Assembly (NCBI RefSeq): GCF_001194135.2
Contig: NC_068990.1
Location: 67,608,032-67,672,008 of the forward strand
Length of the DNA stretch: 63,977 nucleotides
Direction of reading: 5' to 3'
From: Octopus bimaculoides
Taxonomy: Eukaryota
Every line of letters starts with the position of its first letter. Positions within the stretch are counted from its first letter, which is position 1. The notes under the pieces were generated by a model. That model saw only the letters and a list, made by a program, of their open reading frames with translations. It was not told the origin of the DNA and did not search any database. Position numbers and translations under genes: made by a program. Below, piece after piece: positions 1-19,745 of the stretch.

Positions 1-31
<31 letters not shown>

Positions 32-927
32 CATGAATATTCATCTTAGGTCCTGGTAGGATATAAAGGTAGGGTATTTCCAGAGAAGCACTCAACCCAA
101 GTTCTGGGCTATCAACACTGTCAGATTCTTCAAGTGTAGAAAATCCTGGTTTCACAAGTCACACTGTTGTGTGGATGTGGTGCAGAGTAAATTATAATTC
201 AGATGATAAGAAGACAAAAAAATCCTTAATGTTAATGATTTTGTTTGAATTTATGCAAAAATTCGAAGTGAAAATTGACATAATGCTTGTGGTTTCAGAC
301 ATCAGAGTGGCACTTATCAGACTTGCATCAATGGTGCATCCCTGTCTTATTACCATTTGGAGTGTACACACACTCAAACACACACACACATGTGCACATG
401 CACGCACACACATGACAAGGGATTACATAATTATGTATTAAATATAATCAGGTCTTGTGCAAAAATTAATGCAATATATGACAACACTAAATACATTGTT
501 TTTGTTTTGTATACCATCGTTTCACAGGTTTGATGTTGGATACAATGAAATATAGAAGACAATAAAATAAATCAAAGCATAATACATGTAAAACAAAAAT
601 ATGTAGAACATAATAAAGAGAAGCAAGCTGTTTATTAATTGGACAAAATAATAAAATAATCAAATCTGGAAATGAAAACAATTTGACATAGAAAAGCTAT
701 AAGAAAAAATTTAATATGGAAAGCCAAACAAAATGCACTATATTTTGTGAACTACTAAAAGTGAATTTTCATATATATACATATACATATATAAATGTTA
801 GATCAATTTTATATTCTGGAAACTGTCACTCAGAGTTTCATATCATTCTTAAATCATTGACCATTTGTATGTTTGCAGATCACTAGCTGGACATGAAACC
901 CAACACAAGACAGCTTCTTTTTAATAT

Positions 928-953
928 TTATCTGTTTGTTGTATCAGTAATTA
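928..953 (-). CDS. Candidate terminal coding exon of the Sushi gene (adds LITDTTNR-stop)
   Basis: Pyrimidine-rich acceptor ttttgctttttctctgtattcAG| (AG at 955-954), 173 nt past the Sushi donor. The phase-1 join gives c|ta att act gat aca aca aac aga TAA. AT-rich UTR-like sequence follows, with AATAAA on the minus strand near 630. Confidence 0.4.
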
Positions 954-1126
954 CTGAATACAGAGAAAAAGCAAAATTTTACACATGGAATTAACATTTT
1001 TAGTGATCAAAACATTACATTATGTATATGTATATATGAGTACATGCATATTATATATATATATATATATATATGCATGTATTATCATTGCAAGAAACTG
1101 TGTTGTTCAGAAAACTTGTTACTTAC

Positions 1127-1321
1127 GAGTACATGTCATATTAGGACCAACCCACACATCACCTCCGACACACCATGCTCGGAGCACACTTTCCTTTCTA
1201 GCCGTGAAACCTTCGTTACATCGATACTCAAGCATGTGACCAACAGAGTATTTCTTCTGGGTCTCAGGCCCATCATGTACAGCATTATGCACTTTCGGAG
1301 GATCTTGACACTCGTTCTTTT
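1127..1321 (-). CDS. Internal coding exon encoding one Sushi/CCP (SCR) domain; resembles CCP2 of LEV-9/Hasp-like proteins
   Basis: Manual translation: KNECQDPPKVHNAVHDGPETQKKYSVGHMLEYRCNEGFTARKESVLRAWCVGGDVWVGPNMTCT, with C-x2-PP...Y-x-C-x2-GF...C...W-x-GP-x3-C. Acceptor atattgcAG| (AG at 1323-1322), donor C|GTAAGT (GT at 1126-1125). 195 nt, symmetric phase 1-1 as is typical of CCP exons. The family assignment comes from remembered motif similarity only. Confidence 0.9.
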
Positions 1322-1619
1322 CTGCAATATTGTATATAAGTTCAACTTTTATAGTAAAATATCATTGGTCTCTTTGACTTTCTTTTTAATTATTCTGAGT
1401 TTAACTGTCACCAACAAACATCATGATACCCTCCGATTTCAGAGGTCAGGAAAGAAAAGCAAATGTTTACTGTTTATTGTATTTTCCTTTTGCTATTTCT
1501 ATAACTGTATAGAGTTTCAAAATAGTTGTGGCATTAATTTTGCTGTAAGCTAAACATAAGTTGATTGCTATTTAAGTGTTCTATCTATCTGCCTGCCTAT
1601 CAGTATATGTACATAGAGT

Positions 1620-1662
<43 letters not shown>

Positions 1663-1963
1663 ATATATATATACACATCTCTCTCTGTGTCTATCTATCT
1701 GTCTACCTATCCATCTATCTATCTATCTATATATATANNNNNNNNNNNNNNNNNNNNNNNNNNNNNNNNNNNNNNNNNNNNNNNNNNNNNNNNNNNNNNN
1801 NNNNNNNNNNNNNNNNNNNNNNNNNNNNNNNNNNNNNNNNNNNNNNNNNNNNNNNNNNNNNNNNNNNNNNNNNNNNNNNNNNNNNNNNNNNNNNNNNNNN
1901 NNNNNNNNNNNNNNNNNNNNNNNNNNNNNNNNNNNNNNNNNNNNNNNNNNNNNNNNNNNNNNN

Positions 1964-2018
<55 letters not shown>

Positions 2019-2568
2019 GCATGTACATATATACATATTGTGTATATATATGTGTATGTATTGTGTATTTGTGTACGGTGGATTCATACATATGTAACAA
2101 CAAATATTTCTTAGGGAATTAGAAAGAACAGAGAAATGGTTCAAACACCAATCTCTTGATATAATCAAATCACCAAATACTTTGGGATTTTAACATCTAG
2201 CCTTGTGCCATTATCGCAAAGGAACATCAGGATAGATAATAAATATTTGATACTGCAATAGCTGAATTTACTAGAACTGTGATCAAAGAACAGGATGTGT
2301 TATACATCAAGATCTTAAGTAACATGGTGCAAATATCTAGTGAGACTGAATATACATAGAGATACATATGGTTTCTAGTAACCAGGAGAAACGTCTAGCT
2401 TAAATATTATTCAGAATTAGAAGCGAATGGCCCCATAAAAGTATTCCATTGGGAATAGCTAGAATGTAAAGACTTTTATTTATCTATTGCGAGCTGCAAT
2501 TTCTTCTAATAACAGCACACTCAAACAAAAGATCTTAACAACGCTAAGACTAAGAAATGATAGTAATA

Positions 2569-2619
2569 ATAGTAATAATACTAATAATAGTAATAATAGC
2601 TAATAATAATAACAATAAC

Positions 2620-2676
<57 letters not shown>

Positions 2677-2896
2677 CCTTTCTACTAAAGGCACAAGGCC
2701 TGAAATTTATGTGGGGAGGATAGTTGATTATACTGATCCTAGTACTTAATTGGTACTTAATTTATCAACCCTGAAAGGATGAAATGTAAAATTGACCTTG
2801 GCAGAATTTGAACTCAGATTGCAAAGATGGACGAAATGCTGCTAAGCATTTTGTCCAGCATGCTATCAATTCTGCCAGCACACTGCTCCAATAATG

Positions 2897-2937
<41 letters not shown>

Positions 2938-3365
2938 CTTTTCTATTGTAACCAAAGGGATGAAATTCTGGAGGAAGGGATTTGTTGATTAGATGAACCC
3001 TAGTGCTCACCTGCCACTTTTCTCATTAACCCTGAAAGGATGAAGGGGAAAGTCGACCTTGGTATAATTTGAACTCTGACAAACAAAACACCACTAAATA
3101 TTTTGCCTGAAACGCTAACGATTCTGTTAGCTCACCACCTTAATAATGATAATAATGATATTGATTTCTGATTTAGGTGCAGCACCATCAGTTTATAAGG
3201 TGGGAGGTGGAGTGTCAATTACATTTACCCCAGTGATTGACTGATACTTTATTTTATTGACCTGGAAAGGATGAAAGGTAAAGTTGATCTCGGTGGGATT
3301 TGAAGTCAAAATATAAAGAGCTGGAAGAAATTCCACTAAGCATCTATAGAGATTCTGCCACTTGT
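2569..3365 (-). mobile_element. Train of 3 tRNA-derived SINE family A copies (about 2676-2889, 2937-3141, 3165-3365) separated by (AAT)n
   Basis: Sense strand has A-box TGGCAGAAT, B-box GAGTTCAAATTC, body tttgcctttcatcctttc-ggggtcgataaa-taagtaccag, and tail ggccttgtgcc...tagaaagg(ATT)n. Confidence 0.85.
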
Positions 3366-5636
3366 GAATAGTAATTATAAAAAATTTCATTATGTTTCTG
3401 CTGCACATTTTATAATCTTCCAAGTAGTGGAATGTTAAGGGATATGATGGAATTAGAATTAATGACTTCCCAAATTTATATAAAACAAGTTTTAAGTTTA
3501 AGTTTAACTCTTCACCATCATCCTACTAGAAGAAAATGCTTGATTAGAAGCATTATAATGTTTAGATATCTGACTTTCAATGCAGATTATTAATTCCCAT
3601 AACTGGCTTGCTTATTTATTCTATTGACAGTACAATAGAATAAATATTAGCAATATATTTTGATTTGAGTCATGCCTCTGTCTCATACCACACCACTTCT
3701 CACTATCTATAAAAAATATCTCAATAATAAATCCATGTTATTGTTCCTTACATGTAAGAATACTGAACCTTTTAAGAGAAGGTAAAGAAAAGTTGTAGCA
3801 ATCATGCCTTTGCTTAAAAGCCTTTTGTGAATGATGCGAAATTGTTTAAAATAGAAATTGCAAATACATTACTGATTTAATTTTCTGAGAACATACCACA
3901 CACTGCATTAAGTGTAACAACAATATAATAATTGCTTCAATTGTTATAAAACAGTTATGTTTATCTAAAATTTGTTTAGGATGTACTGGGCGTCTGTCTG
4001 CTGAGGTGTTTGTACTTGTCTCACTATGTATATATGTATCCTATGTTTGCCTGTATGTATTGTGTTAAATGCAATGTAATTAGCATAAATCTATGCTGTT
4101 TATAATTCTGTAATGTAAGGTTGAACATATGGATATAAGTGCACTCACTTTATTGTATAACAAATTCATGCATTTACACATCTATGCATGTCTGTATGAA
4201 TGTGTGCATGTATGTCTGTGTGTGTGTGTGTGTGTGTGTGTGACTGTGTTTGCATTTTCATCTGATAATCCCACATTATTACCTTTGTGTTTGTGTGCCT
4301 GTCAGCAGGCTTTTAACAAATTTATGGAATATTTTATTTTACAGATTTATGTAGATATTTTACTGTATGATAAGTGGTGTGCGCATTTCTATATCTGTAT
4401 AATTGTGTGCACATGCACTTTCATGTGTGTGTGTGCGTGTGTGTGTGTGTGTGTTTCAGTATGAATGTCTGTGTAAGTGTGTGTGAGCGCGTGTGTGTAT
4501 TACTTGCTGTGATATGTTGTGTGTATATAATTGTAAAATTATCTATTTCTAAGATAAGGTGTGAGCTTTAAAGAGTTTGAGAGTCTATTATATGAATGTT
4601 AATGAGTTTGTGTATTAGTGTGCTTGCGTGTATGCGTGTGCATATGAGTGTTTTTGTGTAAGTGTTAATGCTAAAGGGGGTTTAAATGCTTACTGAGATG
4701 TGTTGAAGTGAGTTTTAATAGGTGTACAATATGTATGCATGTGATAATTCATTTTATGCCTGTGTTTCCCATCGTTGTACAATCGTGTATGNNNNNNNNN
4801 NNNNNNNNNNNNNNNNNNNNNNNNNNNNNNNNNNNNNNNNNNNNNNNNNNNNNNNNNNNNNNNNNNNNNNNNNNNNNNNNNNNNNNNNNNNNNNNNNNNN
4901 NNNNNNNNNNNNNNNNNNNNNNNNNNNNNNNNNNNNNNNNNNNNNNNNNNNNNNNNNNNNNNNNNNNNNNNNNNNNNNNNNNNNNNNNNNNNNNNNNNNN
5001 NNNNNNNNNNNNNNNNNNNNNNNNNNNNNNNNNNNNNNNNNNNNNNNNNNNNNNNNNNNNNNNNNNNNNNNNNNNNNNNNNNNNNNNNNNNNNNNNNNNN
5101 NNNNNNNNNNNNNNNNNNNNNNNNNNNNNNNNNNNNNNNNNNNNNNNNNNNNNNNNNNNNNNNNNNNNNNNNNNNNNNNNNNNNNNNNNNNNNNNNNNNN
5201 NNNNNNNNNNNNNNNNNNNNNNNNNNNNNNNNNNNNNNNNNNNNNNNNNNNNNNNNNNNNNNNNNNNNNNNNNNNNNNNNNNNNNNNNNNNNNNNNNNNN
5301 NNNNNNNNNNNNNNNNNNNNNNNNNNNNNNNNNNNNNNNNNNNNNNNNNNNNNNNNNNNNNNNNNNNNNNNNNNNNNNNNNNNNNNNNNNNNNNNNNNNN
5401 NNNNNNNNNNNNNNNNNNNNNNNNNNNNNNNNNNNNNNNNNNNNNNNNNNNNNNNNNNNNNNNNNNNNNNNNNNNNNNNNNNNNNNNNNNNNNNNNNNNN
5501 NNNNNNNNNNNNNNNNNNNNNNNNNNNNNNNNNNNNNNNNNNNNNNNNNNNNNNNNNNNNNNNNNNNNNNNNNNNNNNNNNNNNNNNNNNNNNNNNNNNN
5601 NNNNNNNNNNNNNNNNNNNNNNNNNNNNNNNNNNNN

Positions 5637-5675
<39 letters not shown>

Positions 5676-5823
5676 TATATAGAACAGATATACAAACTTC
5701 ATTGTACCAATTCTATTTTGACAGCTTAAAATATTAATAATGATAATCAGATTCTTTTTATCTCTCAATCCAACCCTCCTATGTTTCCTTCATATGGTCT
5801 ACTTTAAGCTGCTATTCTGCAGG

Positions 5824-5861
<38 letters not shown>

Positions 5862-6599
5862 TCGTGTGTATAGGTGAGGAGGTATTATTTAGAGTTTATA
5901 ATTACAGAAAATTACGATGTAGAAATACAATTTAAAAAAAAAAGATCCCAAAATTAATTTTAAAAAAACAAACACTATAGAAATATATTAACTGTTAAAT
6001 CTTTGGGTGTTTTCTTCTGTTTTGATTTCTTTTTCTTGTAGCTTATGATAAAATTTCCAATTTTGATTCTAATCACTACTACTACCACCACAACCACCAC
6101 CACCACCACTATTACTTGTAGTAATTGTAGCAGTAGTATAACTACTGTTGTTGTTGTTGACCATTATTAACCTTCATATAAATATTCTTGGTTATAATTC
6201 ATTTTCCACCAGAAACATCTGCCATATCTAGAGAAGTGATGCTATCACAATTTGAGGTTCTTCAGATGTTTTAGTTAAGGAATTATGTGTCAGTTCTATA
6301 TATTCTAATGCTGAAACTCCAGAATAAATGTTGAACTTGAAACCAATGGAAGCTATACTTTCTAGTCCTAAAACCCTCAATAAATATAAAGCTTTTGCTG
6401 ATCCAATTGTATGTTGACAGAAAGCTAGAGAAGATCTTTTTTCAAGAGTTCATATGGTGGGATCAAACTTGGGACCTTGTGCTTGTAATGCAAAGTTCAT
6501 AACTGTTTGGCCAAGCTGCTCCTTGAACATACGTATATATATATGTATGTATATATATAATTATTATTTTTATTCATATTCTTTCTATTTGTCTTTCTT

Positions 6600-7760
6600 C
6601 TCCTGAGTCATCTATGTCACATCTGAACCTTTTCCCACTGCTGAAAGATGCAACATTTTTCTGAACACACATTCTGTTCCAAGTATTGCTGCCAACCGTG
6701 GACTTCCTATAAAGTTTGGTATTTTCAGCTTTGCATGAGAGTATATTGTCTTTTTTTTTTCAGATGGCCTCAAGCACACTGATCGCAATAGGCAACACGC
6801 TCACTTTTGAGTCTCTATGAATGCGTTTCACTTCTGATGCTAAGGTTTTGGTACTTCTTGACTTTCTAATTCCCTATCTTCACAATAGACTGGTTTGCAG
6901 GTATAGCTACATCAATGAAGGTTCATTCTTTGGATTCCTTCCATAACAGAGTGATATCAGTTACATTGCAGCTTTTCATCTGTGTAGATTGGTATATATC
7001 ATGTGAATTTCACCTGATCATTCTCTGCTACTGGCAAAGGCTGGTTCTCATACCACTTATTGGAACATTCTAGCCTATACCTTTTGCACAACTCCCAGTA
7101 TATTTGCACAGCTACTTTGTTATGGCCTTTTTTTAGTACTCCTTTCGGCTCAGTTTTGAGCATCCACTAATCATGTCTAACCATCTCAGATCATTTTTCA
7201 CATAATCTACACAAAAGTGATACTGCTGTTTTACCAATGCCACACTTGATTACATTGCTTCATAAAGCTTGTTCCTGAGCAGCAACAATCAATTCTTCTG
7301 TCTCCTTTAAAACTCCATGTTTTCACTGTCTCCAGGATAAGCCAACTTCATCCAGTATTTGCTGGAAAAACTCTCCAAGTAGGACTTTCTCTTTGCAGTC
7401 GATGATCTTTTTTCTATTAGTCCTCATTTTCTATGCCTTGAGGGTCTGACTATTGTCACGGATCAACTCCTCACTCAGTAAAGCCTATAACATTCTTTCA
7501 TCACTGCCTCACAGATAGGCATGCAAAGTCTTGATCTCCTTCATAACACTATCCTTTATTCCAACCAATCCTCTTCCACTGTCCTTCCTAAGTAAATAAA
7601 GCCTCACTACATTACTTCTAGTACAAAGGCACCCAAGCATAATCATTATCATCCCAGTTTTTCTGTTCATACTGACCGGTTCCTACTTTGTCCATTCTAT
7701 AATTCCTATGTAGTAGAATAAAACAGTATGTTCACTTCTCTTATACACTCATCATCTGGA
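6600..7760 (-). mobile_element. Decayed R4/Dong-clade non-LTR retrotransposon (post-RT region, CCHC knuckle, RLE endonuclease)
   Basis: Frame-disrupted peptides: LRKDSGRGLVGIKD, KETEELIVAAQEQAL, LCRLC...H..SGCSKLSRKEY..HNKVAVQIYWELCK, KWYENQPLPVAENDQVK, PDITLLWKESKE*TFIDVAIP..KVKKYQNL, LAAILGT. Confidence 0.85.
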
Positions 7761-8119
7761 AGTTATATTTCACTGCTGTCTACTTTTCCTCCTCTCCTCA
7801 GTTCAATAAAAGTGCATTTATCTTGACCAAATGCCATTTGGATGTCATGTGAGAAAATTTGCACAGCTTGAATAAGGGAATGCAGTTGTTTAATTCACAA
7901 CTAAATATAAGAGCTTTCATTTTCTATTATCACTTTACTCTTAAGCAGAAGAGGTATAAAACTCAGAGTTGCAATTCGTGAAATTCCACCTTGAAATATT
8001 CTAATTGCATTGACAACTTTTAAATTGCTAACTGAAGATTATTTTCGTTGGCATCATCAACATTATTTTTATTATTATTATTATTATTATTGTTGTTGTT
8101 GTTATTGTTGTAGCAGCAA

Positions 8120-10145
8120 CATGAGAGCATTGCAAAAAATTCCATGCCGTATTTCTTTAGGCACTGTGTTCAAATCCACTTTAGGTCAAATTTTCCTTTC
8201 ATCCCTCTGGAGTTGGTAAAATAAAGTATTAACTAAGTACTGAGGTCAATTTAATAGACTAACCCCTCCCTTCAAAGCTGCTATGTAAGTATAAATATAA
8301 TCATTATTATAATTTTTGTTGCTGTTGTTGTTGGAGTTGCTGAAAATGGTAAAATAACTGAAGCATTAGAAGGTAAAACCTAAATGCTAAACTACTTAAT
8401 TTTGTCAGAAAAATTGCAATCCTGGATGCATTTTCAGCCATATTACTTAAAGTCCCTTAATGTCAGCTTTTTAACCTTCAGGACTCATTAAGTTTTTTGA
8501 TACCTGCCCATCTGAGAATTCACTTAGTTCTTTGATACAAACTTTCTCTTTTAAAAATGATTTAAATTAAAGCCTTCCATCAAAATTTCATGTTAAATGA
8601 TGTTCAAAACACCAGCTTAATTAGGACAAGGTTATTTTAATAAATTATTCAGGACTTACAAAACTAATTGAAACAAAAAGCAATGTATTTCAACAAGAAT
8701 GTTGTAACAATAAGTTTACAATAATACCAGTCATATTTTGAGGTCAATTTAATCTTCCATTTAAAGGTGCTTTTATTGTTAATATTATTGAGATGGCAGA
8801 ATTGTAGCATTTTATCTGTCCTTATGTTCTGAGTTCAAATTCCAGTGAGGTCAACTTTGCTTTCGTCCTTTTGGGATAGATAAAATAAGTACCAGTTGAG
8901 CACTGGGGTCAACACAATCAGATTACTCCCTTCCTTGAAATTGCTGGCCCTGTGCCAAAATTTCAAACCATTATTATTATTATTATTATTATTGTTGTTG
9001 TTGTTGCTGCTGTAAGAAAATCTGACAAAATACCATAAGATATTTTCTTTGGATTGTTTTGAGTTGAATTCCACAAGACGTTAGCTGACATTGCCTTTCA
9101 AGTACAGGAGTCAATGGTCAGAACTAACTTTCACCTCTCAAAACAGCTGCCTTTATATAAATCAGAAATAACTGTTATAGGTCACAAGATTGGTAGGATG
9201 TTGGACAAAATGTTTGTTCCAAAAACTGAGTTCAAATCCTACCACAGATAATTTTGCCTTTCATCTTTCGGGGGTTTTAAAAAATAAAGTACCTAACAAG
9301 TACTGAGGCTAATGTAGTCAACTAACTCCTTTTCTCTAGAACTAATGGCCTTGTGCCAAAATTTGAGGCAATTACTATTATTATTATTATTATTATTATT
9401 GAGTGAGAGAGAAGTGCATGCCACCAAAGTGACACTGGGGTACAATTATACGAAGCCCAATATACCCATCATGACTACCCATCTAATAAGGGTACACCAG
9501 GTACATGCATCACAATCACATGTGTGCGACATGGTGATCTTATAGCAAGATAAACACCTCATGGCCTTGCAGGTGGGGCCCAGTTAGAATTTTCTTCAGG
9601 TTGAGTAGCCCATCCCGCTCAAAAATTCCCTGGATAAGGTTTGTTTAAGGATGATGAATGAAACACCCATGTTTCCATGGGTGAATTATTCAAACTCCAA
9701 AGAATTCCTCTCGACACATGGCTATGAAGCTCCCCCACTACTTCTGCTCATGATCAGAGATGCACATATCGTCAGCCATCAAGGAACATGCTCAACTGGT
9801 TAAGGTCAAGCAACTGACAAGCAAATCTGTGGTACTGAGCAATATATTTGCTGTAGCCCTATCTTTTACACCTTCTTCTTCTTCTTACCACCACCACCAC
9901 CACCATTATTATTATTATTATTATTATAAGGTGGTGAGCTGGCAGAATTGTTAACATGTCAGACAAAATGCTTACCAGCATTTCATTCATGTTTACATTC
10001 TGAGTTCAAATTCCACCAAGATTAACTTTGCACTTCATCCTTGTGGGCTTCATAAAATAAGTATCTGTTAAGTACTGGGGCTGTGTATCTGATTTTCCCC
10101 TCCTCACAAAAAAATTGCTAGCCATGAACCAAACTTTGAAACCAT
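8120..10145 (+). mobile_element. Cluster of 4-5 plus-strand SINE A copies (about 8120-8290, 8790-8968, 9015-9150 partial, 9185-9370, 9929-10145)
   Basis: Each has the gagttcaaattcc B-box, the ttgcctttcatc core and a ggccttgtgccaaaatttgaaacc(ATT)n tail. Confidence 0.75.
9400..9890 (-). mobile_element. Family F dispersed repeat (~500 bp, (AAT)n tail, no Pol III head seen)
   Basis: Reverse complement aligns along its length with 40255-40772 (e.g. gtaccccagtgtcactttg, gagtagcccatc, atgggctacagcaaata). Confidence 0.8.
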
Positions 10146-10233
10146 TATTATTGCTATCATAATTATTATCATTATTATTATTATTATCATTATTATTATT
10201 ATCATCATTATTATCATTATCATCATCAACATC

Positions 10234-10284
<51 letters not shown>

Positions 10285-10932
10285 AACCTAAGCATTATTT
10301 AAAAAAGCAACATTATTATTATTTTCTTTATTATCATTGTTATCCTTTGTCGGGCATCGCTACAGAGAAATGAATGAATAATAATTCATATTATTATCAT
10401 TGTCAATATCATTTGGAAATAAACATTCACTTTTCTTTCTTTGCCTCTTTCTTTTTTCTCTTTTTTTTTTGTTACTTTTTTTCTTTTTCTCGTTGCTATT
10501 GTATTGAACGTTACTCAATCACAACGAATTTGCGTCAGATATTCTCAACTATTCAATTGACTCAGAAAATGCATTTTATTTCGAACAGGGTCTGACAAAA
10601 GAACAATGTTGAAAAGAGCAAGATAATTAGAGAGTATTACCAAAAAGAGTACCAGCCATTGTTTTTACACATGTATGTGGATTTATTTTTTTAAAAAATT
10701 TTTTAATCTTCTTTTTCTTTTTTCCATTATATCAGTTTACTTTCTCGAAATACACAAATGCAACAATCATTATATCACTATACTAAATGTATATTCAACA
10801 ACATTATGTACATATATGTGTGTGCNNNNNNNNNNNNNNNNNNNNNNNNNNNNNNNNNNNNNNNNNNNNNNNNNNNNNNNNNNNNNNNNNNNNNNNNNNN
10901 NNNNNNNNNNNNNNNNNNNNNNNNNNNNNNNN

Positions 10933-10967
<35 letters not shown>

Positions 10968-12169
10968 TCTATTACACACGCATAGAGATACTGAAATGAA
11001 ATATGATATAGAAACATGTAAACAACAGAAGGTGTATGTGTATGTGAACATACATACATAAATAAATACATACTCACACATTTGAAAAGGTTATAAAATA
11101 GGCACATATATATACTGTAGTAATATTTTATAAACATGTTTATGTCTATAGATATACAAGCTCACGCACACACATACATACATATATATATACATATACA
11201 CACATACATACATAAATCCACACACACACACACACACATATATGTATATACACAGACAAACACACATATAACTCAGAGAGGATGAATGAGAAAGAACATT
11301 TATACTGTAATATGTACAAGCACATTTACTTTCATGCATGGCCTAAGTTTACTCAGTATTAATAAGGCAACACAAGAGATATAATTACTGGTGGTTAATG
11401 ACAGTAACTTAACAAGCAATAAAAACAAATCTCTTTGTGTTAAGTACAGTTTTGTATTGGTAACCACAACAAAACTGGCAGCAATACTGCAAAGAGCTGT
11501 AATGACAGTAACTGTATAGTAACTGATAGTAATTTCGTAAATGATGAAGATCAGCAATTATGATATTCTACTGACACAGACCACCACTAGTTCCCTCTGA
11601 ATTTTTCTTTTTATTTGTTAATTACATAAAACCATGATTATGATCAGAGGGACAAGAGGAGCAGCAATAACAGCAGTAAAAAAATTAATAAATAAATAGA
11701 ATTGTTTGTGACCAAGTACAAAGATATTTTCATTGGAAATGCAGCATATAACACTTAAAGGAATAAAATAAATCTATTGCTACTCTTTATTTCATTAACC
11801 TCTTTAACGATGAAAAGGTAGGATGCTCCCACAACATAAAGGATGCGAACTCACAATGCTAAAATATCAAATTAACTGAAGTAAATGGTATTTTATTTGT
11901 CGATGGTCAATCTCAAACAGGACTCTCAAAACAATTCTTAATTTAGCAGAAAGTTTAAAACATGTTATGTATCGAGAAGTGAGAAGAAAAGCTTTGTTAG
12001 GTTCATACAATATGTTATTAATTCTTTGATAATATGGAGCATACCATGACTCCCCAATACATACCAGTATCTACTTTGAGTTATTTCACTGGGGTCATTT
12101 TTGTTTTAATATATGCAAATTTTTGAGGGCATTAATGTGCCCTGCTATTTGCGTATGTTTCTATATCCC

Positions 12170-12600
12170 TCAGCTATAACAGATAGGTTTGGAATTTCTC
12201 AAGGCCAAATTTCTGTGGCTAGAAACCCTCCCTATTGCCAAACATCAACTGTTGCCAAGTAAGGTAATATTTTCACATGGCCAGACATGTTTTTCACAGA
12301 AAACTGGAAACAACCTTGCTTGTATGACAATGATGCCTATTCACAACTGTCATGTGATGTCAAAACAAAGGAAAATACACCTAAAACACACATACACATG
12401 CACATCATATATACATACAAACAAAAAAACAAACAGACAAACATAGATACATGACAGGCTTATTTTTGGTTTTCGTCTATGAAATGCACTTACAAGGCTT
12501 TGGTCAACTGAGAACTATCTTTTGAAGACTACTACCCAGGGTGTTATGTAGTGGAACTGAACTTGAGACCATGATTAAGAAGCTGTGCATGTGTGCTTTT
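12170..12600 (-). mobile_element. SINE C2 (C-type tRNA head + (CA/TG)n + D'-type tail), degenerate
   Basis: Head motifs (acaaggctttggtc, gtggaactgaac) at 12490-12570. Tail motifs (caagtaaggtaatatttt, catggccagacatgtttt) at 12255-12300. Confidence 0.65.
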
Positions 12601-12699
12601 GTACATAAATATTCAGTGAATGAAATTTAACACTGTTTTGTACTTCTTCAAAGATCCCTACCTGGCAATATGCCCAGAGCCATAATATTTAAAGCTTTT

Positions 12700-13100
12700 C
12701 TTTTGGCATAGTCATCAGAATAAATAAGTCTAGCTCTGGTAACATCTCTATTTTCATCCGTCTTCAAATATAACCTAACATTCTTTCTCTCTCAACAGCG
12801 ACCATTTTAAAGCCATTGAGAATCTTTGCCAACATACAACTTTGAAGACTGCTGTAGAAACTGTCCTCCGTAAACTCACAAATGGATATCTGACAGATAT
12901 AATGTTGACATAAAACATACTTTGCATCTATTTTCAGGAATCAAACCGAAATTTGGTTCTGTCAAAACTTTATGGCTTGATCATAAGTGTTCTCTCGTTC
13001 TCACCACCATATACACTTGCATTATTAGGTAGGCATAGCCAAATCAGCTTTTGAATGAACTATGGCATGGATTGGACAGATGGAAAAGCTGTGCATTGTT
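12700..13100 (-). mobile_element. Possible highly decayed RTE-clade LINE fragment (C-terminal ORF region)
   Basis: Broken frames give YGGE (cf. YGCE/SETW) and GYI-R-MENRDVTRARLIYS...KRK (cf. GHVxRMxxxRxPKxLLY..GKR). Confidence 0.35.
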
Positions 13101-13482
13101 ATTCTAACTGTAGTCATCCTGTCTATATTTTAGATATGCTGTCCTAAGATTTAGCACTTCATACACATTGAAGCCATTTTGAAAGACACATGGGAGGTCA
13201 ATCTGTCTGTATTTGTGCAGGTTGAACATTTCTAAATTAATTTATCTTTATAGTGCTCTATGCTGTAACATGAAATTAGATGAAGAAAAGGAAATGACAT
13301 GTAGAGGAGTAGTTGATGACTTCTGTATCTTGATTGCTACCGATATACAGATGTTGAGGTGTATATTTACATAAGTTCATATTTATATTTATTTCAACAT
13401 CATTTAACAACTATATAACTATATTTTCATATTTACAAATGCACATAAAGACACAGAAATATATTTTTACAAAATATGTGCA

Positions 13483-13519
<37 letters not shown>

Positions 13520-14118
13520 NNNNNNNNNNNNNNNNNNNNNNNNNNNNNNNNNNNNNNNNNNNNNNNNNNNNNNNNNNNNNNNNNNNNNNNNNNNNNNNNN
13601 NNNNNNNNNNNNNNNNNNNNNNNNNNNNNNNNNNNNNNNNNNNNNNNNNNNNNNNNNNNNNNNNNNNNNNNNNNNNNNNNNNNNNNNNNNNNNNNNNNNN
13701 NNNNNNNNNNNNNNNNNNNNNNNNNNNNNNNNNNNNNNNNNNNNNNNNNNNNNNNNNNNNNNNNNNNNNNNNNNNNNNNNNNNNNNNNNNNNNNNNNNNN
13801 NNNNNNNNNNNNNNNNNNNNNNNNNNNNNNNNNNNNNNNNNNNNNNNNNNNNNNNNNNNNNNNNNNNNNNNNNNNNNNNNNNNNNNNNNNNNNNNNNNNN
13901 NNNNNNNNNNNNNNNNNNNNNNNNNNNNNNNNNNNNNNNNNNNNNNNNNNNNNNNNNNNNNNNNNNNNNNNNNNNNNNNNNNNNNNNNNNNNNNNNNNNN
14001 NNNNNNNNNNNNNNNNNNNNNNNNNNNNNNNNNNNNNNNNNNNNNNNNNNNNNNNNNNNNNNNNNNNNNNNNNNNNGGCTTTTATGGCTGGAAGCCTTTT
14101 TATATGTCATCAACACCA

Positions 14119-14152
<34 letters not shown>

Positions 14153-14730
14153 GCGTGTTCACACACATGCATGTTCACACACATGCATGTGCATACACAT
14201 ACACCCATTTATCTAATGACTTTGTGATTCATACTGATTCACACTGACAGACTTCTGTGCAATCTGGAAGCCCCTGTTCCTCTGGTTCTCTCACCTGCAT
14301 CACAGAGTATACTGACAGACAGAAAAAGATAGAACAAGTATATACAATGCACATTTCAACTCTGGAGTTTTGCCAGTAAATGTATGCTTTCTTTAACAAT
14401 CCATGAACACTTTGCTTATGTACCTGTTGATATACACTTGTTAATGCAACTCTAAGCAGAGTTAAAATGTGCAGCACATGCAGTTGTTACTTCTTTTCTT
14501 GTCTATGAACATATTGTGTACATAGACATAATGTTCACATTTGTTGTCATATACAGTGTTGGTTAAAAATGTATAGATATCTGGTGATGTTGTCAGTACT
14601 CCTGCCAACAATTTGTCAGCTGGTTTAGAACATTTGAAGATATGGAAAAAATCCTTGCTTGACAAACAGGTAGGGGTAAATGACAGGAAAGCTATCAGGC
14701 ATGTACAAATATACATGTGTGTGTGTATGC

Positions 14731-14804
<74 letters not shown>

Positions 14805-16045
14805 ATATATATAATCTTTTATTTATAATGATATTAGCAGATAATTGTCATTTGAAGTTCTGAGTGTGTATATAAATATGTGTCCTCATTCATACATCTA
14901 AATATTTATAAATTCAACACAGGAATGTAAATAAAGTTTATTTACATCTTCCTCTTTCAACAGATACATTTCTATAAAATTTAATACACCTCCATTGTTT
15001 GTTTGGCTATACAGACATACACATTCATACATGCACACATACTTATATACATAAAATACACACACACACATATACATACATATGGACATATATATATACA
15101 TCTGTATGTATGTATGTATGTATGTGTGTATGTGTGTGTGAGGGGGGGTATGTTTTCTTTATCTTGCCAATATATTCTGAAACAAAATGTAGACAAGAAC
15201 CAGGCAACTGGAAATATGAAACAGTTCATAAAAATCACTTCAAATTGTCTCTAGTAGCTTCTCTCATGTAGCAAAATGTTTGCTGTTGGTAANNNNNNNN
15301 NNNNNNNNNNNNNNNNNNNNNNNNNNNNNNNNNNNNNNNNNNNNNNNNNNNNNNNNNNNNNNNNNNNNNNNNNNNNNNNNNNNNNNNNNNNNNNNNNNNN
15401 NNNNNNNNNNNNNNNNNNNNNNNNNGTCTTCGTTGCTTTCTTTTGTCATCATCATCATCGTTGCCATCACCATCACCATCACCATCATAATCATCATCAT
15501 CTTTGTTATAATCTTCTTATAAACTGTGTTTTGCTACTGCTGCTGTTCATTATCTTTTTTCTTTGTCTTTAGTTTTATATCCTTATTTCATTTCATTTCT
15601 TTTTTTTTTTCTAAATTTATAAAAAAAAAAAATATTTATCATGTTTATGACTCCTCTTCCTGCTACTCCAATTCTCTTCATATCCTTCATTTTCTCTCTT
15701 TTTATAACACTTCATCATGACCATCATCATAGCTATTGTTCATGTTGACTAGGACAGATAGACAATACAAATATTGACTGGATACTACACAGACTGTTTG
15801 TGGCTGACTAGATAATGTGGACAAGTTGGCTTAGAAATAGGGAGAGAGTCAACAACTCTTATAGTTCTGATTGCAAATCTCATTGAAGCTGACTGCTTTA
15901 TCAGAATTTAGAAAATAAACACCAATGACAGGGGGAAATCAATTGCTTTTCACTACACACCACACTCTAATAAAACCCAAAATGAGTTATTATTATTATC
16001 ATCGTCTGTATTATTATTATTATCATCATCCTCATCATCATCATC

Positions 16046-16440
16046 AAAGTGGTGAGCTGGCAGGAATCATTAGCACACCGGGCAAAATGTTTAGTGATAT
16101 TCCATTCATCTTCACGTCCTGAGCTCTAATCCTACTGAGGTCGGTTTATCTTTTCAGGGTCAATGACATCAGTACAAGTTATGCACTGGGGTCAACGTAA
16201 TCAACTAGCCCCCTTCCAAAAGATTGCAGGTCTTGTGCCTATAGTAGAAAGGATCATCATCATCAACATCATCAATGTTTAGTGATATTCTGTTCATCTT
16301 TACATTCTGAGGTCTAATTCTGCTGAGGTCAATTTTGCATTTCGAGGTCAATAAAATAAGTATCAGTTTGGCACTGGGGTTGATGTAATCAATTTATCCC
16401 CTCCCCTGAAACTGCTGGCCTTGAGTCAAAACTTGAAATC
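16046..16440 (+). mobile_element. Two tandem SINE A copies (16046-16257, about 16275-16440)
   Basis: ggtgagctggcaggaatcattagcacaccgggcaaaatg head. Tails end gtagaaagg and cttgaaatc. Confidence 0.8.
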
Positions 16441-16450
16441 ATTATCATCC

Positions 16451-16482
<32 letters not shown>

Positions 16483-17437
16483 TTCTTTTATTGTTGTTAT
16501 TGTTGTTGTTCTTAATATTCTTATTGCCAGACAATAGCTGAGGAGATAGTTGAGAAGGCTAAACTAAATCTTTTATAGAATTTGGTTTTTTCTCTATCAG
16601 GTCTGAGACTCTTGCAGAGTTGAGAAAATGCGAATTGTTAACCTTTTTTTTTTTAAATTTTCATTTTGTTTTTCCTGTCTTCAGTCAGTGGCCAACATTC
16701 ATTCTGGGTCATCACTTATCATGATTTTTCACCAATCATATCAACCCCAACACTNNNNNNNNNNNNNNNNNNNNNNNNNNNNNNNNNNNNNNNNNNNNNN
16801 NNNNNNNNNNNNNNNNNNNNNNNNNNNNNNNNNNNNNNNNNNNNNNNNNNNNNNNNNNNNNNNNNNNNNNNNNNNNNNNNNNNNNNNNNNNNNNNNNNNN
16901 NNNNNNNNNNNNNNNNNNNNNNNNNNNNNNNNNNNNNNNNNNNNNNNNNNNNNNNNNNNNNNNNNNNNNNNNNNNNNNNNNNNNNNNNNNNNNNNNNNNN
17001 NNNNNNNNNNNNNNNNNNNNNNNNNNNNNNNNNNNNNNNNNNNNNNNNNNNNNNNNNNNNNNNNNNNNNNNNNNNNNNNNNNNNNNNNNNNNNNNNNNNN
17101 NNNNNNNNNNNNNNNNNNNNAACGTTGCCTGGTGTGAACACAATTCCAATGACGTAATTTATGGACACACTCTACCCATCTCTATTATTGTTGCTCAATG
17201 CATGGTTGGCCACTACTATCTTGTTGACCAGCATGTCGTATCAAATTGTCTTTACGTCTATGTGTTTAATTATCTCAGAGAGGTTTGATTGATGAGCTGA
17301 ATACATAAAATAGATATTTGGTTGTTGATTAAGAGCTTGTATATATATATATATATATTTAGGATGTCCTTTTGTGGTGCTCTCTTTTTCTTTTAAATCT
17401 TTTACGAAATATCCCTTAAACAGTAAGGAAATCAACA

Positions 17438-17760
17438 GTATCATGATGACTATGATGATGATGATGTTGATGAAGGTATTGGTGACAGGCTGTGGAGGTG
17501 TTGATGATGATGATGGGAACATAGTGTTGGAGGTGGTGATATTGATGATTATGAAGACTATGATGATGAAAATGGCAATTACAATGATGGCAGTGGTGTT
17601 TATGAAGAGTTTGATTGATGATGATGGCAACAACAGGGATGGTGATGGTGGTGGCTGAAGTGGTGGAAGTAGGGGTGGTGGTGATAGCACTAGTGGCTGT
17701 AGAGGAGCTGTTGATGGTGATGATGATGACCCAGAAGTACACTGAGGTTGTGACAGAAGA
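17438..17760. repeat. Degenerate (GAT/GGT)n trinucleotide mosaic
   Basis: Visible low-complexity run. It accounts for the poly-M/V/D/H ORFs in the track. Confidence 0.85.
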
Positions 17761-17844
17761 AAGGAGAGAGGGGGGATACACTGGTAGTCAGCTGGTCCTT
17801 AATTTGAACTAAGTAGGAAGACTAAGCAAAATAGTGAAATCAAG

Positions 17845-17945
17845 TTCTTGGCTCAAGGACACAAAACACTATCTGGTCCAGGAATCAAACTCATGACCTT
17901 ATGGTAATGAGCCAAACATCCTAATCACTATGCCACATATCTTCC
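17845..17945 (-). mobile_element. SINE family H head fragment
   Basis: Reverse complement reads tggcatagtgattagg (A box), gagtttgattcc (B box), gtgtccttgagc. Confidence 0.7.
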
Positions 17946-18049
17946 AATACCCCTCATTGCGGAAGAAGATTGGGTACATCTTCTCCAAAGAGTAGTCAAT
18001 AAATCCTTGTAATACAGACGACAAAAACATTCAGTAAATTACTTCAAAA

Positions 18050-18270
18050 CATGGCATAAATCACATTGAAACAATGGTGGACTCTTGATCGGAAGATTAT
18101 GGTTTCAATTTCTAGACCAAGCAACGTGTTGTCTTCTTGAGCAAAATACTTCATTTCATGTTGCTCCAGCTGGCAAAATGAGTAATCTTGTGACAGACCA
18201 GAATCCTATCCAGGTGGGGTATATATATATGCCATGAAACCAGGAAACTGATCCTTTACCTTTAATGAAA
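18050..18270 (+). mobile_element. SINE family H copy
   Basis: gtgttgtcttcttgagcaaaatacttcatttcatgttgctccagctggcaaaatgagtaat matches the reverse complement of 51895-52145. Confidence 0.7.
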
Positions 18271-18534
18271 CAATGGAGTTGTTTAACCCATATCAATGTC
18301 AGGACTGATGCAAAATTGATATTAAACTCATGTTCAATGCCAACTCCACCCTTAATGAGCATATACACCCCTTCCTCCTATTTGGGCTCTTTTACTGTTC
18401 ACTTTCCTGTGGTTTTATAGCTGTTTTTTTCACCTGGCTTATGACTGTTTTCTCTCCCCTCTTTTGATATTTCTGGATGAGCTGTAGAGCACAGGAGTAT
18501 TGTATACAACAAGCTCATTATCATTATCATTATT

Positions 18535-18870
18535 CATCATCATCATCATCGTCGTTTTAACGTCCGCTTTCCACGCTAGCATGGGTTGGACGATTTTACT
18601 GAGGACTGGTGGACCAGGTGGCTACACCAGGCTCCAATCTAATTTGGCAGAGTTTCTACAGCTGGATGCCCTTCCTAACGCCAACCACTCCGAGAGTGTA
18701 GTGGGTGCTTTTACGTGTCACTGGCATGAAGGTCAGTCAGGCAGTACTGGCAATGGCCATGCTCGAAATGGTGTATTTTACGTGCCACCTGCACAGGAGC
18801 CAGTCCAGTGGTGCTGGTAACGATCTCGCTCGAATGTCTTTTCATGTTCCACTGGCATAAGTGCCAGGAA
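18535..18870 (-). mobile_element. Family D retroposon 3' part ending in (GAT)n
   Basis: catcatc-gttttaacgtccgctttcca-gctagcatgggttggacg...gctggatgcccttcctaacgccaaccactc. Near-identical to 37805-37967. Confidence 0.85.
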
Positions 18871-18875
18871 GGCGA

Positions 18876-18923
<48 letters not shown>

Positions 18924-18924
18924 C

Positions 18925-19110
18925 AAGGCAGCATGCTGGTAGAATTGTTAGTTCACCAAGAGTATTGCTTAGCAGCATTTCATCTGCTTAAACATTCTGA
19001 GTTTTAATTCTGCCATAGTAAACATTGCCTTTCATTCTTTCATGGTTAATAAAAGGAGTACCAGGTGGGGTGTCAATGTATCCCACAAAACTGCTGGACT
19101 TGTACCCAAA
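18925..19110 (+). mobile_element. SINE A copy
   Basis: gctggtagaattgttag head, ttgcctttcattc core, aaaatttgaaat tail. Confidence 0.7.
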
Positions 19111-19292
19111 ATTTGAAATAATCATCATCATCATCATTATTATCATTATGAAAAGCACCATCACCACTACCATCATCAATATCATCATCTTCATCACCAC
19201 CATCACTATCATGATCATTATCAGCATCATCACCATCACTACCACTATATTTTAGCACAATTGTTTTAATAACTTTCTCATCATCATCATCT

Positions 19293-19346
<54 letters not shown>

Positions 19347-19588: not shown

Positions 19589-19663
<75 letters not shown>

Positions 19664-19745
19664 TGTGTTGTTATTGACAGAATTTTTATCTCTTCTACAG
19701 TAGGGTGACCTTGTATTTACTTTTCTATATATTGCTGCACTCCCT

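What the first reader, a model, noticed from the sequence alone, without database searches (positions are those of the whole stretch)
1127..1321. Hidden Sushi/CCP exon resembling the LEV-9/Hasp cholinergic synaptic scaffold family
Seen: a stop-free 64-codon CCP domain with canonical phase 1-1 splice sites, absent from the ORF track because it has no ATG. Recalled knowledge: the signature A-x-H...Q-x2-[FY]...Y-x-C-x2-G[FY]...RA-x-C...W-x-GP-x3-C matches my memory of the second CCP of Drosophila Hasp and the LEV-9 family (WAP + CCP proteins acting at cholinergic synapses in fly and worm). Inference: a cephalopod member of this family.
Basis: partly seen in the sequence, partly recalled or inferred. 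Interest (0 to 1): 0.7.

Follow-up and report, generated by a model that had tools for sequence, protein, structure and literature searches.

The report
Octopus lev-9-like gene, CCP2 exon

Summary
Window 1321->1127 is a 195-nt phase 1-1 exon with a canonical cag| acceptor and |gtaagt donor. It encodes a 64-residue Sushi/CCP domain (Pfam 32.6 bits; AlphaFold pLDDT 95; TM 0.82 to DAF). Contigs from five RNA runs end exactly at both splice sites.

The peptide occurs verbatim in RefSeq XP_052827228.1, "protein lev-9-like [Octopus bimaculoides]", and in an older model with WAP + CCP1 upstream. So it is CCP2 of a WAP + 10-CCP protein and is already annotated.

Kinship with LEV-9/Hasp holds up. The WAP module is near-identical to that of insect Hasp-named proteins. 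Eight CCPs are collinear with insect Hasp-named proteins, a rhabditid nematode protein and an annelid protein.

Extras: molluscs carry a tandem duplication of the CCP1-CCP2 pair, and all RNA contigs here skip the CCP3 exon. The mollusc proteins also end where the long forms have a furin-like site.

A role at cholinergic synapses in cephalopods is inferred only. C. elegans LEV-9 and D. melanogaster Hasp themselves could not be retrieved. Interest is low: the call is correct but already known.

The parts
1127..1321 (-). Internal coding exon (195 nt, phase 1-1) encoding CCP2 of the O. bimaculoides lev-9-like gene. The peptide is (E)KNECQDPPKVHNAVHDGPETQKKYSVGHMLEYRCNEGFTARKESVLRAWCVGGDVWVGPNMTCT.
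   Evidence: sequence and frame; Pfam Sushi 32.6 bits; RNA contigs of five runs end at both borders; peptide verbatim in P0004 and XP_052827228.1; pLDDT 95.4; TM 0.82 to DAF CCP.
1322..1324 (-). 3' splice site (acceptor) ...ttgcag| of the upstream intron.
   Evidence: RNA contigs leave the genome at 1321/1322 and continue with the CCP1 exon end ...CCTCGATGTGTTATGAAGGATCCAGATGTTG, which encodes PRCVMKDPDV + G|AA. This matches ...PRCVMKDPDVEKNEC in P0004 and P0232.
1121..1126 (-). 5' splice site (donor) |gtaagt of the downstream intron.
   Evidence: RNA contigs leave the genome at 1127 and continue with TTCTATGTAATAGACCCCCAGATATTCCAA, which encodes (C|TT)L-LCNRPPDIP, the start of the CCP4 exon.
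1325..63977 (-). Part of the intron between the CCP1 and CCP2 exons (more than 62.6 kb; AT-rich, with microsatellites, SINE-like repeats and nine assembly gaps). No other exon of this gene was detected.
   Evidence: the CCP1-exon 30-mer is absent from the window; tblastn with four family proteins hits only 1122-1349; gaps; no other CCP-like stretch.
1..1120 (-). Start of the downstream intron (towards the CCP3 and CCP4 exons, which lie beyond the window).
   Evidence: the CCP4-exon 30-mer is absent from the window.

Best explanation
Window 1321->1127 (minus strand) is a constitutive-looking internal exon of the Octopus bimaculoides gene annotated 'protein lev-9-like'. It encodes one complete Sushi/CCP module, the second after an N-terminal WAP four-disulfide domain. 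The full protein is WAP + 10 CCPs (about 650-720 aa). It is the mollusc orthologue of nematode LEV-9 (WAP + 8 CCPs) and of the N-terminal WAP + 8-CCP part of insect Hasp.

Shown here: exon borders and transcription; CCP fold; position as CCP2; WAP + CCP-only architecture; collinearity with Hasp-named insect proteins and a nematode protein; a CCP2-specific motif (PP..-x-A-x-H ... Y-x-C ... A-x-C ... W-x-GP-x3-C) conserved from octopus to insects and nematode; and a mollusc-wide tandem duplication of the CCP1-CCP2 pair, which makes this exon's domain a paralogue of CCP4. One CCP per phase 1-1 exon allows in-frame cassette splicing, and the RNA contigs here join CCP2 directly to CCP4, skipping CCP3.

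Inferred from what is established for LEV-9 and Hasp (review PMC9083331): the product is a secreted, rod-like extracellular scaffold whose CCP array, not the WAP domain, tethers and clusters acetylcholine-receptor complexes or partner matrix proteins in cholinergic synaptic clefts. On that view the invariant non-structural residues of CCP2 would form a conserved interaction or inter-module surface.
For: Exon and splicing. CCP identity: Pfam; pLDDT 95.4; DAF, TM 0.82, rmsd 1.8 A. Gene identity: the peptide is verbatim in P0004 (residues 219-282, with Pfam WAP at 23.2 bits against a 20.8 cutoff at residues 105-146) and in XP_052827228.1 'protein lev-9-like [Octopus bimaculoides]'. It is about 91% identical in the O. 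sinensis and O. vulgaris lev-9-like proteins. Family: mollusc orthologues are named lev-9/lev-9-like. The profile search reaches insect 'hig-anchoring scaffold protein'/Hasp proteins and a rhabditid nematode protein. WAP modules compare as CPRKENVLSRDCLKRCSTDDDCVSKKKKCLCDGVCGMSC (octopus) and CPRDEEQATLLGQKCLRKCSSDEDCKSKKKKCLCDGVCGMSC (insects). In the domain matrix, octopus CCP1,2,5,6,7,8,9,10 map in order onto CCP1-8 of the outgroups, and the exon's domain best matches CCP2 everywhere. WAP-bearing proteins give single collinear HSPs of 33-37% identity and 263-337 bits, against 27-30% and 223-243 bits for WAP-less CCP proteins. Signature specificity. Invariant columns. A shared C-x(2-4)-HP-x-[LI] motif follows ancestral CCP8; the long forms then have a furin-like site, while the molluscs terminate. 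This fits the reported C-terminal processing of LEV-9 and Hasp (PMC9083331).
Against: C. elegans LEV-9 and D. melanogaster Hasp themselves were not retrieved, so orthology was tested against Hasp-named proteins of other insects, drosophilid orthologues (D. navojoa, Scaptodrosophila) and a Mesorhabditis protein. On its own the exon scores no better against insect Hasp CCP2 (20-27 bits) than against the best domains of unrelated CCP proteins (18-31 bits). Hasp and nematode CCP2 slightly prefer octopus CCP4 over this exon's CCP2 (89/114/81 against 82/76/80), so this exon may be the more diverged copy of the duplicated pair. The N-terminus and signal peptide of this paralogue are unresolved: the RefSeq model starts inside the WAP domain and the older model has a low-complexity N-terminus. 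There are no data on tissue, cell type or localisation, and no held paper links lev-9 with octopus.
Confidence: 0.85

Rival explanations
1. The exon belongs to a generic multi-CCP protein of another family (SVEP1, CSMD, or a complement-receptor/regulator-like protein), and the LEV-9/Hasp resemblance is only ordinary CCP similarity.
For: Several RefSeq isoforms of the octopus genes, and many insect orthologues, are auto-named SVEP1, CSMD1 or complement factor H. PDB sequence hits are CR1, CR2 and DAF. Single-domain scores to insect Hasp are in the generic range.
Against: The proteins carrying this exon contain only WAP + Sushi by Pfam, with no VWA, EGF, pentraxin or CUB domain (precomputed Pfam columns). 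The WAP module is near-identical to Hasp's. The CCPs are collinear. The CCP2 signature is absent from about 3,500 CCPs of unrelated proteins.
Confidence: 0.03
2. It is a true LEV-9/Hasp-family orthologue, but in cephalopods it does something other than organise cholinergic synapses. Examples are a general extracellular-matrix, immune or protease-inhibitor (WAP) role, or a role at other synapse types.
For: No expression or localisation data were obtainable here because run identities are coded. Depth in the sampled raw RNA runs is low: 4, 1 and 0 reads in about 6% of each run. Molluscs have a lineage-specific duplication and a short form without the long C-terminal CCP array of Hasp. Octopods have two paralogues, which would allow divergence.
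Against: The WAP module and the CCP2 motif are strongly conserved across protostomes, which implies a conserved constraint. Both characterised members, LEV-9 in the worm and Hasp in the fly, act at cholinergic synapses (PMC9083331).
Confidence: 0.25
3. It belongs to the Hikaru genki (Hig) family rather than Hasp/LEV-9.
For: Hig is also a CCP protein of cholinergic synaptic clefts (PMC9083331). One insect hit is labelled 'Hikaru genki' (P0309).
Against: Hig is defined by an Ig-like domain plus five CCPs and has no WAP domain (PMC9083331). The octopus protein has a WAP domain, ten CCPs and no Ig hit. P0309 itself carries the Hasp-type WAP module and 15 CCPs, so it is a mislabelled Hasp orthologue.
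Confidence: 0.01
4. It is a chance open frame or a dead pseudo-exon.
For: Stop-free stretches of this length are common in the window.
Against: Pfam hit above the cutoff; exact splice use in five RNA runs; about 91% protein identity to other Octopus species and conserved motif positions as far as insects and nematode; exon GC well above the flanks.
Confidence: 0.01

Closest known systems
C. elegans LEV-9 (secreted WAP + 8 CCP protein that clusters levamisole-sensitive AChRs with LEV-10)
   Same: An N-terminal WAP domain followed only by tandem CCPs. It is a short form of similar size (622 aa against about 650-720 aa). The eight ancestral CCPs are collinear with a rhabditid nematode homologue. 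NCBI names the mollusc genes lev-9/lev-9-like.
   Different: Molluscs have 10 CCPs because the CCP1-CCP2 pair is tandemly duplicated. The mollusc protein ends about 20 residues after the conserved HP motif, so the activating C-terminal cleavage described for LEV-9 may not apply. The C. elegans sequence itself was not compared. Function in cephalopods is untested.
Drosophila Hasp (hig-anchoring scaffold protein; WAP + up to 17 CCPs; cholinergic synaptic cleft matrix)
   Same: The WAP module is almost identical (…DC[KV]SKKKKCLCDGVCGMSC). CCP1-8 are collinear. The CCP2 motif PP..-A-x-H…Y-x-C…RA-x-C…W-x-GP-x3-C is shared.
   Different: After CCP8, Hasp continues with a furin-like polybasic site, a long linker and 7-9 more CCPs that molluscs lack. 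Overall identity is only 33-37%. A Hig partner was not looked for in octopus.
Octopus sinensis / O. vulgaris 'protein lev-9-like' isoforms X1-X8 (XP_036361799-805, XP_029641001, CAI9728999)
   Same: They are direct orthologues: the exon peptide is about 91% identical (58/64) and the domain order is the same. O. sinensis isoform X8 has exactly the CCP3-skipped junction …NMTCT|LLCNRPPDIP seen in the O. bimaculoides RNA contigs.
   Different: There are six substitutions in the exon peptide. The O. bimaculoides RefSeq model lists only a CCP3-containing form.
Second octopod paralogue ('protein lev-9 isoform X13' / 'SVEP1 isoform X4' / 'CSMD1 isoform X10', O. sinensis; 'protein lev-9 isoform X5', Argonauta hians)
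   Same: Same architecture, with a clear signal peptide. Its CCP2 is 67% identical to this exon's. Isoform X13 skips CCP2 + CCP3, which restores the ancestral 8-CCP layout.
   Different: It is a different locus and chromosome.
Complement-regulator CCP modules (DAF/CD55, factor H CCP19-20, CR1/CR2)
   Same: The fold is the same: TM 0.82, rmsd 1.8 A to DAF. The four cysteines and the tryptophan are in the canonical positions.
   Different: Identity is only 21-30%. These proteins have no WAP domain, lack the CCP2-specific motif, and have a different biology.

Membership tests
Sushi/CCP/SCR domain (Pfam PF00084) | About 60 residues with four spaced cysteines and a conserved Trp; score above the Pfam gathering cutoff | tested here: met
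   C4, C34, C50, C63 and W56 are present. Pfam gives 32.6 bits against a 20.7 cutoff, covering profile positions 1-56 of 56.
Sushi/CCP/SCR domain (Pfam PF00084) | Beta-sandwich CCP fold | tested here: met
   The AlphaFold2 model has pLDDT 95.4 and is all-beta. The top Foldseek PDB matches are DAF, factor H and MCP CCPs, with TM 0.74-0.82.
LEV-9 / Hasp family | N-terminal WAP four-disulfide domain preceding the CCPs | tested here: met
   P0004, which carries this exon verbatim, has Pfam WAP at 23.2 bits against a 20.8 cutoff at residues 105-146. The O. vulgaris orthologue P0236 has the same module, and it is near-identical to the insect Hasp WAP. Caveat: the current O. bimaculoides RefSeq model starts inside the WAP domain.
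LEV-9 / Hasp family | WAP followed only by tandem CCPs, with no CUB, VWA, EGF, pentraxin or Ig domain | tested here: met
   Pfam finds only WAP + Sushi above cutoff in P0004, P0012, P0013 and P0003. Local segmentation finds ten CCPs.
LEV-9 / Hasp family | Domain-by-domain collinearity with recognised members, with this exon corresponding to CCP2 | tested here: met
   Octopus CCP1,2,5-10 map in order onto CCP1-8 of Musca and Rhodnius 'hig-anchoring scaffold protein', a Mesorhabditis nematode protein, an annelid protein and P0060; a krill protein whose model lacks CCP1 gives the same order shifted by one. The exon's domain best matches CCP2 in each, or the first CCP of the truncated krill model. 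Collinear HSPs are 33-37% identical. This was not tested against the C. elegans LEV-9 or D. melanogaster Hasp sequences themselves.
   In WAP-bearing proteins the regex hits 56 CCP2, 7 CCP4 and 1 CCP3 domains. All 15 hits in 'WAP-less' entries are truncated models of the same family, and no unrelated CCP matches. Invariant positions are C4, P7, A13, Y32, C34, C50, W56, G58, P59 and C63. Drosophilid CCP2 has HARN rather than A-x-H.
LEV-9 / Hasp family | Reciprocal best hit with LEV-9 or Hasp | tested here: inconclusive
   Forward direction: the best non-lophotrochozoan relatives of the octopus protein are all WAP+CCP Hasp orthologues, and RefSeq's similarity-based name is lev-9-like. The reverse search against an octopus proteome could not be run. 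At domain level, outgroup CCP2 marginally prefers octopus CCP4 over CCP2.
LEV-9 / Hasp family | Secreted (signal peptide) | tested here: inconclusive
   The paralogue P0168 and the bivalve P0012 have hydrophobic N-terminal leaders. The N-terminus of this paralogue is not resolved in any model. The 3,253-nt RNA contig extends 541 nt upstream of the exon, but its sequence cannot be read with these tools.
LEV-9 / Hasp family | Proteolytic processing C-terminal to the CCP array | tested here: inconclusive
   A conserved C-x(2-4)-HP-x-[LI] motif follows ancestral CCP8 in all lineages. The long forms then have RRRR|S-, RKKR|S- or RGKR|S-type sites, whereas the mollusc proteins stop there and have no polybasic site.
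LEV-9 / Hasp family | Localisation to cholinergic synaptic clefts and a requirement for AChR or Hig clustering | not testable with these tools
   This needs in situ, antibody and genetic work. No held paper links lev-9 with octopus.
Hikaru genki (Hig) | Ig-like domain plus five CCPs, no WAP domain (PMC9083331) | tested here: not met
   A WAP domain is present, there are ten CCPs, and there is no Ig hit.
SVEP1 / CSMD | VWA, EGF and pentraxin domains (SVEP1) or alternating CUB-Sushi domains (CSMD) | tested here: not met
   None of these domains is found in the proteins carrying this exon. The SVEP1/CSMD1 labels on some isoforms of the paralogous octopus gene are automated names; other isoforms of the same gene are named lev-9.

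The most novel reading that the evidence does not exclude
The CCP1-CCP2 pair of the ancestral LEV-9/Hasp scaffold was tandemly duplicated at the base of Mollusca (CCP3 resembles CCP1, CCP4 resembles CCP2). Because each CCP is a symmetric phase 1-1 exon, cephalopods use the duplicated modules as splice cassettes to make scaffolds of 8, 9 or 10 CCPs. In O. bimaculoides the prevailing transcript skips CCP3, unlike the RefSeq model. This could tune cleft spacing or partner valency at cholinergic synapses in a large-brained mollusc. The duplication and the existence of the isoforms are shown; regulated, functionally meaningful use of them is speculation.
Probability: 0.3. Interest if true: 0.35.

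Novelty: already known. Interest (0 to 1): 0.18.

Why it matters
This mainly validates the scan: a tool-less reader correctly recognised, from one 64-codon exon, both the domain and the specific family and domain position. Biologically, it confirms that cephalopods, like other molluscs, keep the LEV-9/Hasp extracellular scaffold known to organise cholinergic synapses in worms and flies, and that octopods have two paralogues. The gene is already in RefSeq under that name, so nothing new is discovered at the locus. Four by-products may interest people working on synaptic matrix evolution or cephalopod neurobiology: the mollusc-wide CCP1-2 duplication; cassette skipping of CCP3 in all RNA contigs seen; the short form ending where long forms carry a furin-like site; and the inconsistent automated naming (lev-9 / SVEP1 / CSMD1 for isoforms of one gene). 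No paper in the held library addresses lev-9 in cephalopods.

Tried and rejected
- **Plus-strand reading of 1127-1321**: stops in two of the three frames and no CCP in any frame. The exon is on the minus strand.
- **Word-index search with the 64-aa peptide**: returned nothing, although the collection holds the peptide verbatim in P0004. This is a tool limitation for short queries, not evidence of novelty.
Narrowing to 1080-1560 worked.
- **Search for the neighbouring exons in the window**: absent, unless an exon lies in one of the nine N-gaps.
- **PDB sequence search**: only generic CCP hits, so not informative for family assignment.
- **Ranking by total HMMER score**: misleading, because multi-CCP proteins accumulate score. 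It was replaced by per-domain scores, which showed that the exon alone cannot be assigned to Hasp at insect distance.
- **Attempts to read Nakayama 2016 (PMC6602034) and Briseno-Roa 2014 (PMC4036237)**: neither is held. The review PMC9083331 was used instead.
- **tRNA and Rfam scans of the window**: nothing found.
- **Tissue-specific expression**: not attempted, because run identities and tissues are coded or absent.
- **Rejected families**: the Hig, SVEP1/CSMD and pseudo-exon readings were rejected on architecture and RNA evidence.

Full report
**1. Observation.**
The three plus-strand frames of 1127-1321 give no CCP. The reverse complement reads ...atattgcag|AAAAGAACGAGTGTCAAGAT...AATATGACATGTACTC|gtaagtaac. 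The exon therefore runs 1321->1127 on the minus strand. It has an AG acceptor at 1323-1322 and a GTAAGT donor at 1126-1121.

It is 195 nt long and phase 1-1. It encodes KNECQDPPKVHNAVHDGPETQKKYSVGHMLEYRCNEGFTARKESVLRAWCVGGDVWVGPNMTCT. All elements of the quoted signature are present.

Open-frame length alone means little in this AT-rich, microsatellite-rich window, which has hundreds of stop-free stretches of 50 aa or more. Three other results show the exon is real:
- Pfam Sushi scores 32.6 bits against a gathering cutoff of 20.7, over the whole profile.
- It is the only genuine CCP-like stretch in the window.
- Exon GC is 0.467 against 0.25-0.28 in the flanks.

**2. Transcription and splicing.**
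Many RNA runs of the same organism hold the exon. Contigs from five runs (X25, X28, X13, X26, X29) align exactly from 1127 to 1321/1322 and then continue into unrelated sequence. A few raw reads from X42 and X43 also lie on the exon and run past its borders, but they were too few for a loose-end consensus.

The upstream loose end translates to ...PRCVMKDPDV + split Glu. The downstream loose end translates to (Leu)-LCNRPPDIP, which is the start of another CCP. Neither 30-mer is in the window, and tblastn with four family proteins hits only this exon. The rest of the window (more than 62.6 kb, nine N-gaps) is therefore intron.

Raw reads have the first mate on the plus strand. That fits a minus-strand RNA if the library is the usual stranded type.

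**3. Which gene.**
The exhaustive HMMER search returned P0004, which contains the peptide verbatim at residues 219-282, preceded by ...GEIPRCVMKDPDVE. P0004 has a Pfam WAP domain (23.2 bits against a 20.8 cutoff, residues 105-146), then CCP1, this CCP and CCP3.

A cluster look-up shows the same peptide in XP_052827228.1, 'protein lev-9-like [Octopus bimaculoides]' (P0232). The cluster also holds eight O. sinensis isoforms, seven named lev-9-like and one auto-named SVEP1-like, and an O. vulgaris protein, all about 91% identical over the exon. The window is therefore O. bimaculoides, and the exon is CCP2 of an annotated gene. It is 'hidden' only from an ATG-dependent ORF lister.

**4. Splice isoform.**
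In the full-length forms the order is ...NMTCT|HAGCPLL...(CCP3)...SCEK|VLCNRPPDIP...(CCP4). The RNA contigs read ...NMTCT|LLCNRPPDIP. This joins CCP2 directly to the CCP4 exon, and the split codon changes from G|TT (Val) to C|TT (Leu).

This is the junction of O. sinensis isoform X8 (P0240). All five RNA runs show it and none shows CCP2->CCP3. Contigs drop minor variants, so the CCP3-containing form is not excluded.

**5. Is 'lev-9-like' real kinship?**
- **Names.** Mollusc orthologues of the full-length relative P0012 are consistently named lev-9/lev-9-like. A profile of six family members (A1) reaches insect proteins named 'hig-anchoring scaffold protein' or 'Hasp' (Rhodnius, Leptinotarsa, Musca, Plodia), drosophilid orthologues and a rhabditid nematode protein.
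- **WAP module.** It is nearly identical between octopus and insects (…DC[VK]SKKKKCLCDGVCGMSC) and recognisable in the nematode.
- **Collinearity.** In a domain-by-domain score matrix, octopus CCP1,2,5,6,7,8,9,10 match CCP1-8 of every outgroup in order, and the exon's domain has CCP2 as its best match in each.
- **Whole-protein BLAST.** WAP-bearing proteins give one collinear HSP of about 450-550 aa at 33-37% identity (263-337 bits). WAP-less multi-CCP proteins (CR1/2-, SVEP1- and CSMD-like) give 27-30% identity (223-243 bits).
- **The recalled signature, as a regex.** It matched 56 CCP2, 7 CCP4 and 1 CCP3 domains among 1,477 CCPs of WAP-bearing proteins. Its 15 matches among 3,548 CCPs of 'WAP-less' entries are all truncated models or fragments of this same family.
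- **CCP2 alignment.** Across 26 sequences from octopus to insects and nematode, the invariant positions are C4, P7, A13, Y32, C34, C50, W56, G58, P59 and C63, with P8, H15 and A48 nearly invariant.

Caveat: per-domain phmmer scores of the exon fall from 50-147 bits (molluscs) to 42-50 (annelids, krill), 30 (millipede) and 20-27 (insect Hasp CCP2). The last range overlaps the best domains of unrelated CCP proteins (18-31 bits). Raw similarity of this one exon would therefore not have sufficed. Motif, position and context carry the assignment.

**6. Additional anatomy.**
Octopus CCP3 is most like CCP1, and CCP4 is most like CCP2 (self-scores 119 and 112). In 31 of 31 mollusc short forms (bivalves, gastropods, chiton, cephalopods), CCP2's closest intra-protein relative is CCP4. 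Annelid, arthropod and nematode members have a single pair. Molluscs therefore carry a tandem duplication of the CCP1-CCP2 pair. Outgroup CCP2 slightly prefers octopus CCP4 over this exon's CCP2.

After ancestral CCP8 all lineages share C-x(2-4)-HP-x-[LI]. The long forms follow it with a furin-like polybasic site and more CCPs, whereas the mollusc proteins terminate there (HPALQKLWKPIEEGPLNY*). This makes them LEV-9-sized short forms. It also fits the reported C-terminal processing of LEV-9 and Hasp (PMC9083331).

**7. Fold.**
With the CCP2 alignment, AlphaFold2 gives pLDDT 95.4 and an all-beta model. Foldseek's best PDB matches are CCP modules of DAF (TM 0.82, rmsd 1.8 A), factor H and MCP.

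**8. Mechanism.**
Shown: the exon contributes one CCP module to a WAP + CCP-array protein orthologous to LEV-9/Hasp. The one-module-per-symmetric-exon design permits in-frame cassette splicing, which is observed.

Inferred from the worm and fly work summarised in PMC9083331: the product is a secreted cleft-matrix scaffold whose CCPs, not the WAP domain, cluster AChR complexes or anchor partner proteins at cholinergic synapses. The family-specific invariant residues of CCP2 would then be an interaction or inter-module surface.

Not shown: secretion of this paralogue (its N-terminus is unresolved), tissue expression, localisation and function.

**9. Novelty and verdict.**

No held paper discusses lev-9 in octopus or 'lev-9-like' at all. 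The mollusc duplication, the CCP3-skipping transcripts and the short-form terminus are therefore small, apparently undescribed details. Interest is low (0.18).

Noticed in passing
window 26253-26294 (-), 39234-39275 (+), 45996-46037 (+), 61610-61651 (+), 62740-62781 (+): A dispersed repeat with a tRNA-like core (GGGACTGAACCYGGRACCATGTGG) has five copies where none are expected by chance. It is probably a SINE family inside the intron. ARAGORN and Rfam find nothing.
   Followed up: partly
window ~2603-3522, 8838-9445, 10009-10287, 50245-50424, 53564-53860: A second repeated element sits next to (AAT/ATT)n microsatellites. It gives recurring pseudo-peptides such as ...IKYQxSTxVNxIDxxPPxFxPxxYSRKD(Y)n in the stop-free stretch list.
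   Followed up: no
window 1293-1459: One RNA-run contig (X13, 167 nt, depth 5.7) runs from inside the exon through the acceptor into the intron. It is either unspliced pre-mRNA or genomic DNA carry-over.
   Followed up: no
junction at window 1127 (donor) to an exon outside the window: Contigs from all five RNA runs join CCP2 to the CCP4 exon (…NMTCT|LLCNRPPDIP), skipping CCP3. The O. bimaculoides RefSeq model XP_052827228.1 contains CCP3, and the skipped form is annotated only in O. sinensis (isoform X8).
   Followed up: partly
related proteins P0168, P0180, P0181 (one O. sinensis gene): Isoforms of a single octopus gene are auto-named 'SVEP1', 'CSMD1' and 'protein lev-9'. Many insect Hasp orthologues are labelled SVEP1, complement factor H or even Hikaru genki. 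The automated names are unreliable for this family.
   Followed up: partly
related proteins, C-terminal to ancestral CCP8 (e.g. P0311 ~640, P0269 ~600, P0330 ~575, P0236 700-719): A conserved C-x(2-4)-HP-x-[LI] motif is followed by a furin-like polybasic site in the insect, millipede, nematode and annelid long forms. The mollusc proteins end at that point.
   Followed up: partly
window 1738-1963, 4792-5636, 10826-10932, 13520-14076, 15293-15425, 16755-17120, 27873-27985, 29209-29408, 36281-36742: There are nine assembly gaps (3,009 N in total), mostly flanked by (TA)n or (CA)n microsatellites. A small exon hidden in a gap cannot be excluded.
   Followed up: no
tool behaviour: The word-index protein search found no candidate for the 64-aa peptide, although a cluster representative in that collection (P0004) contains it verbatim. 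A negative result from that tool with a short query should not be read as absence.
   Followed up: yes
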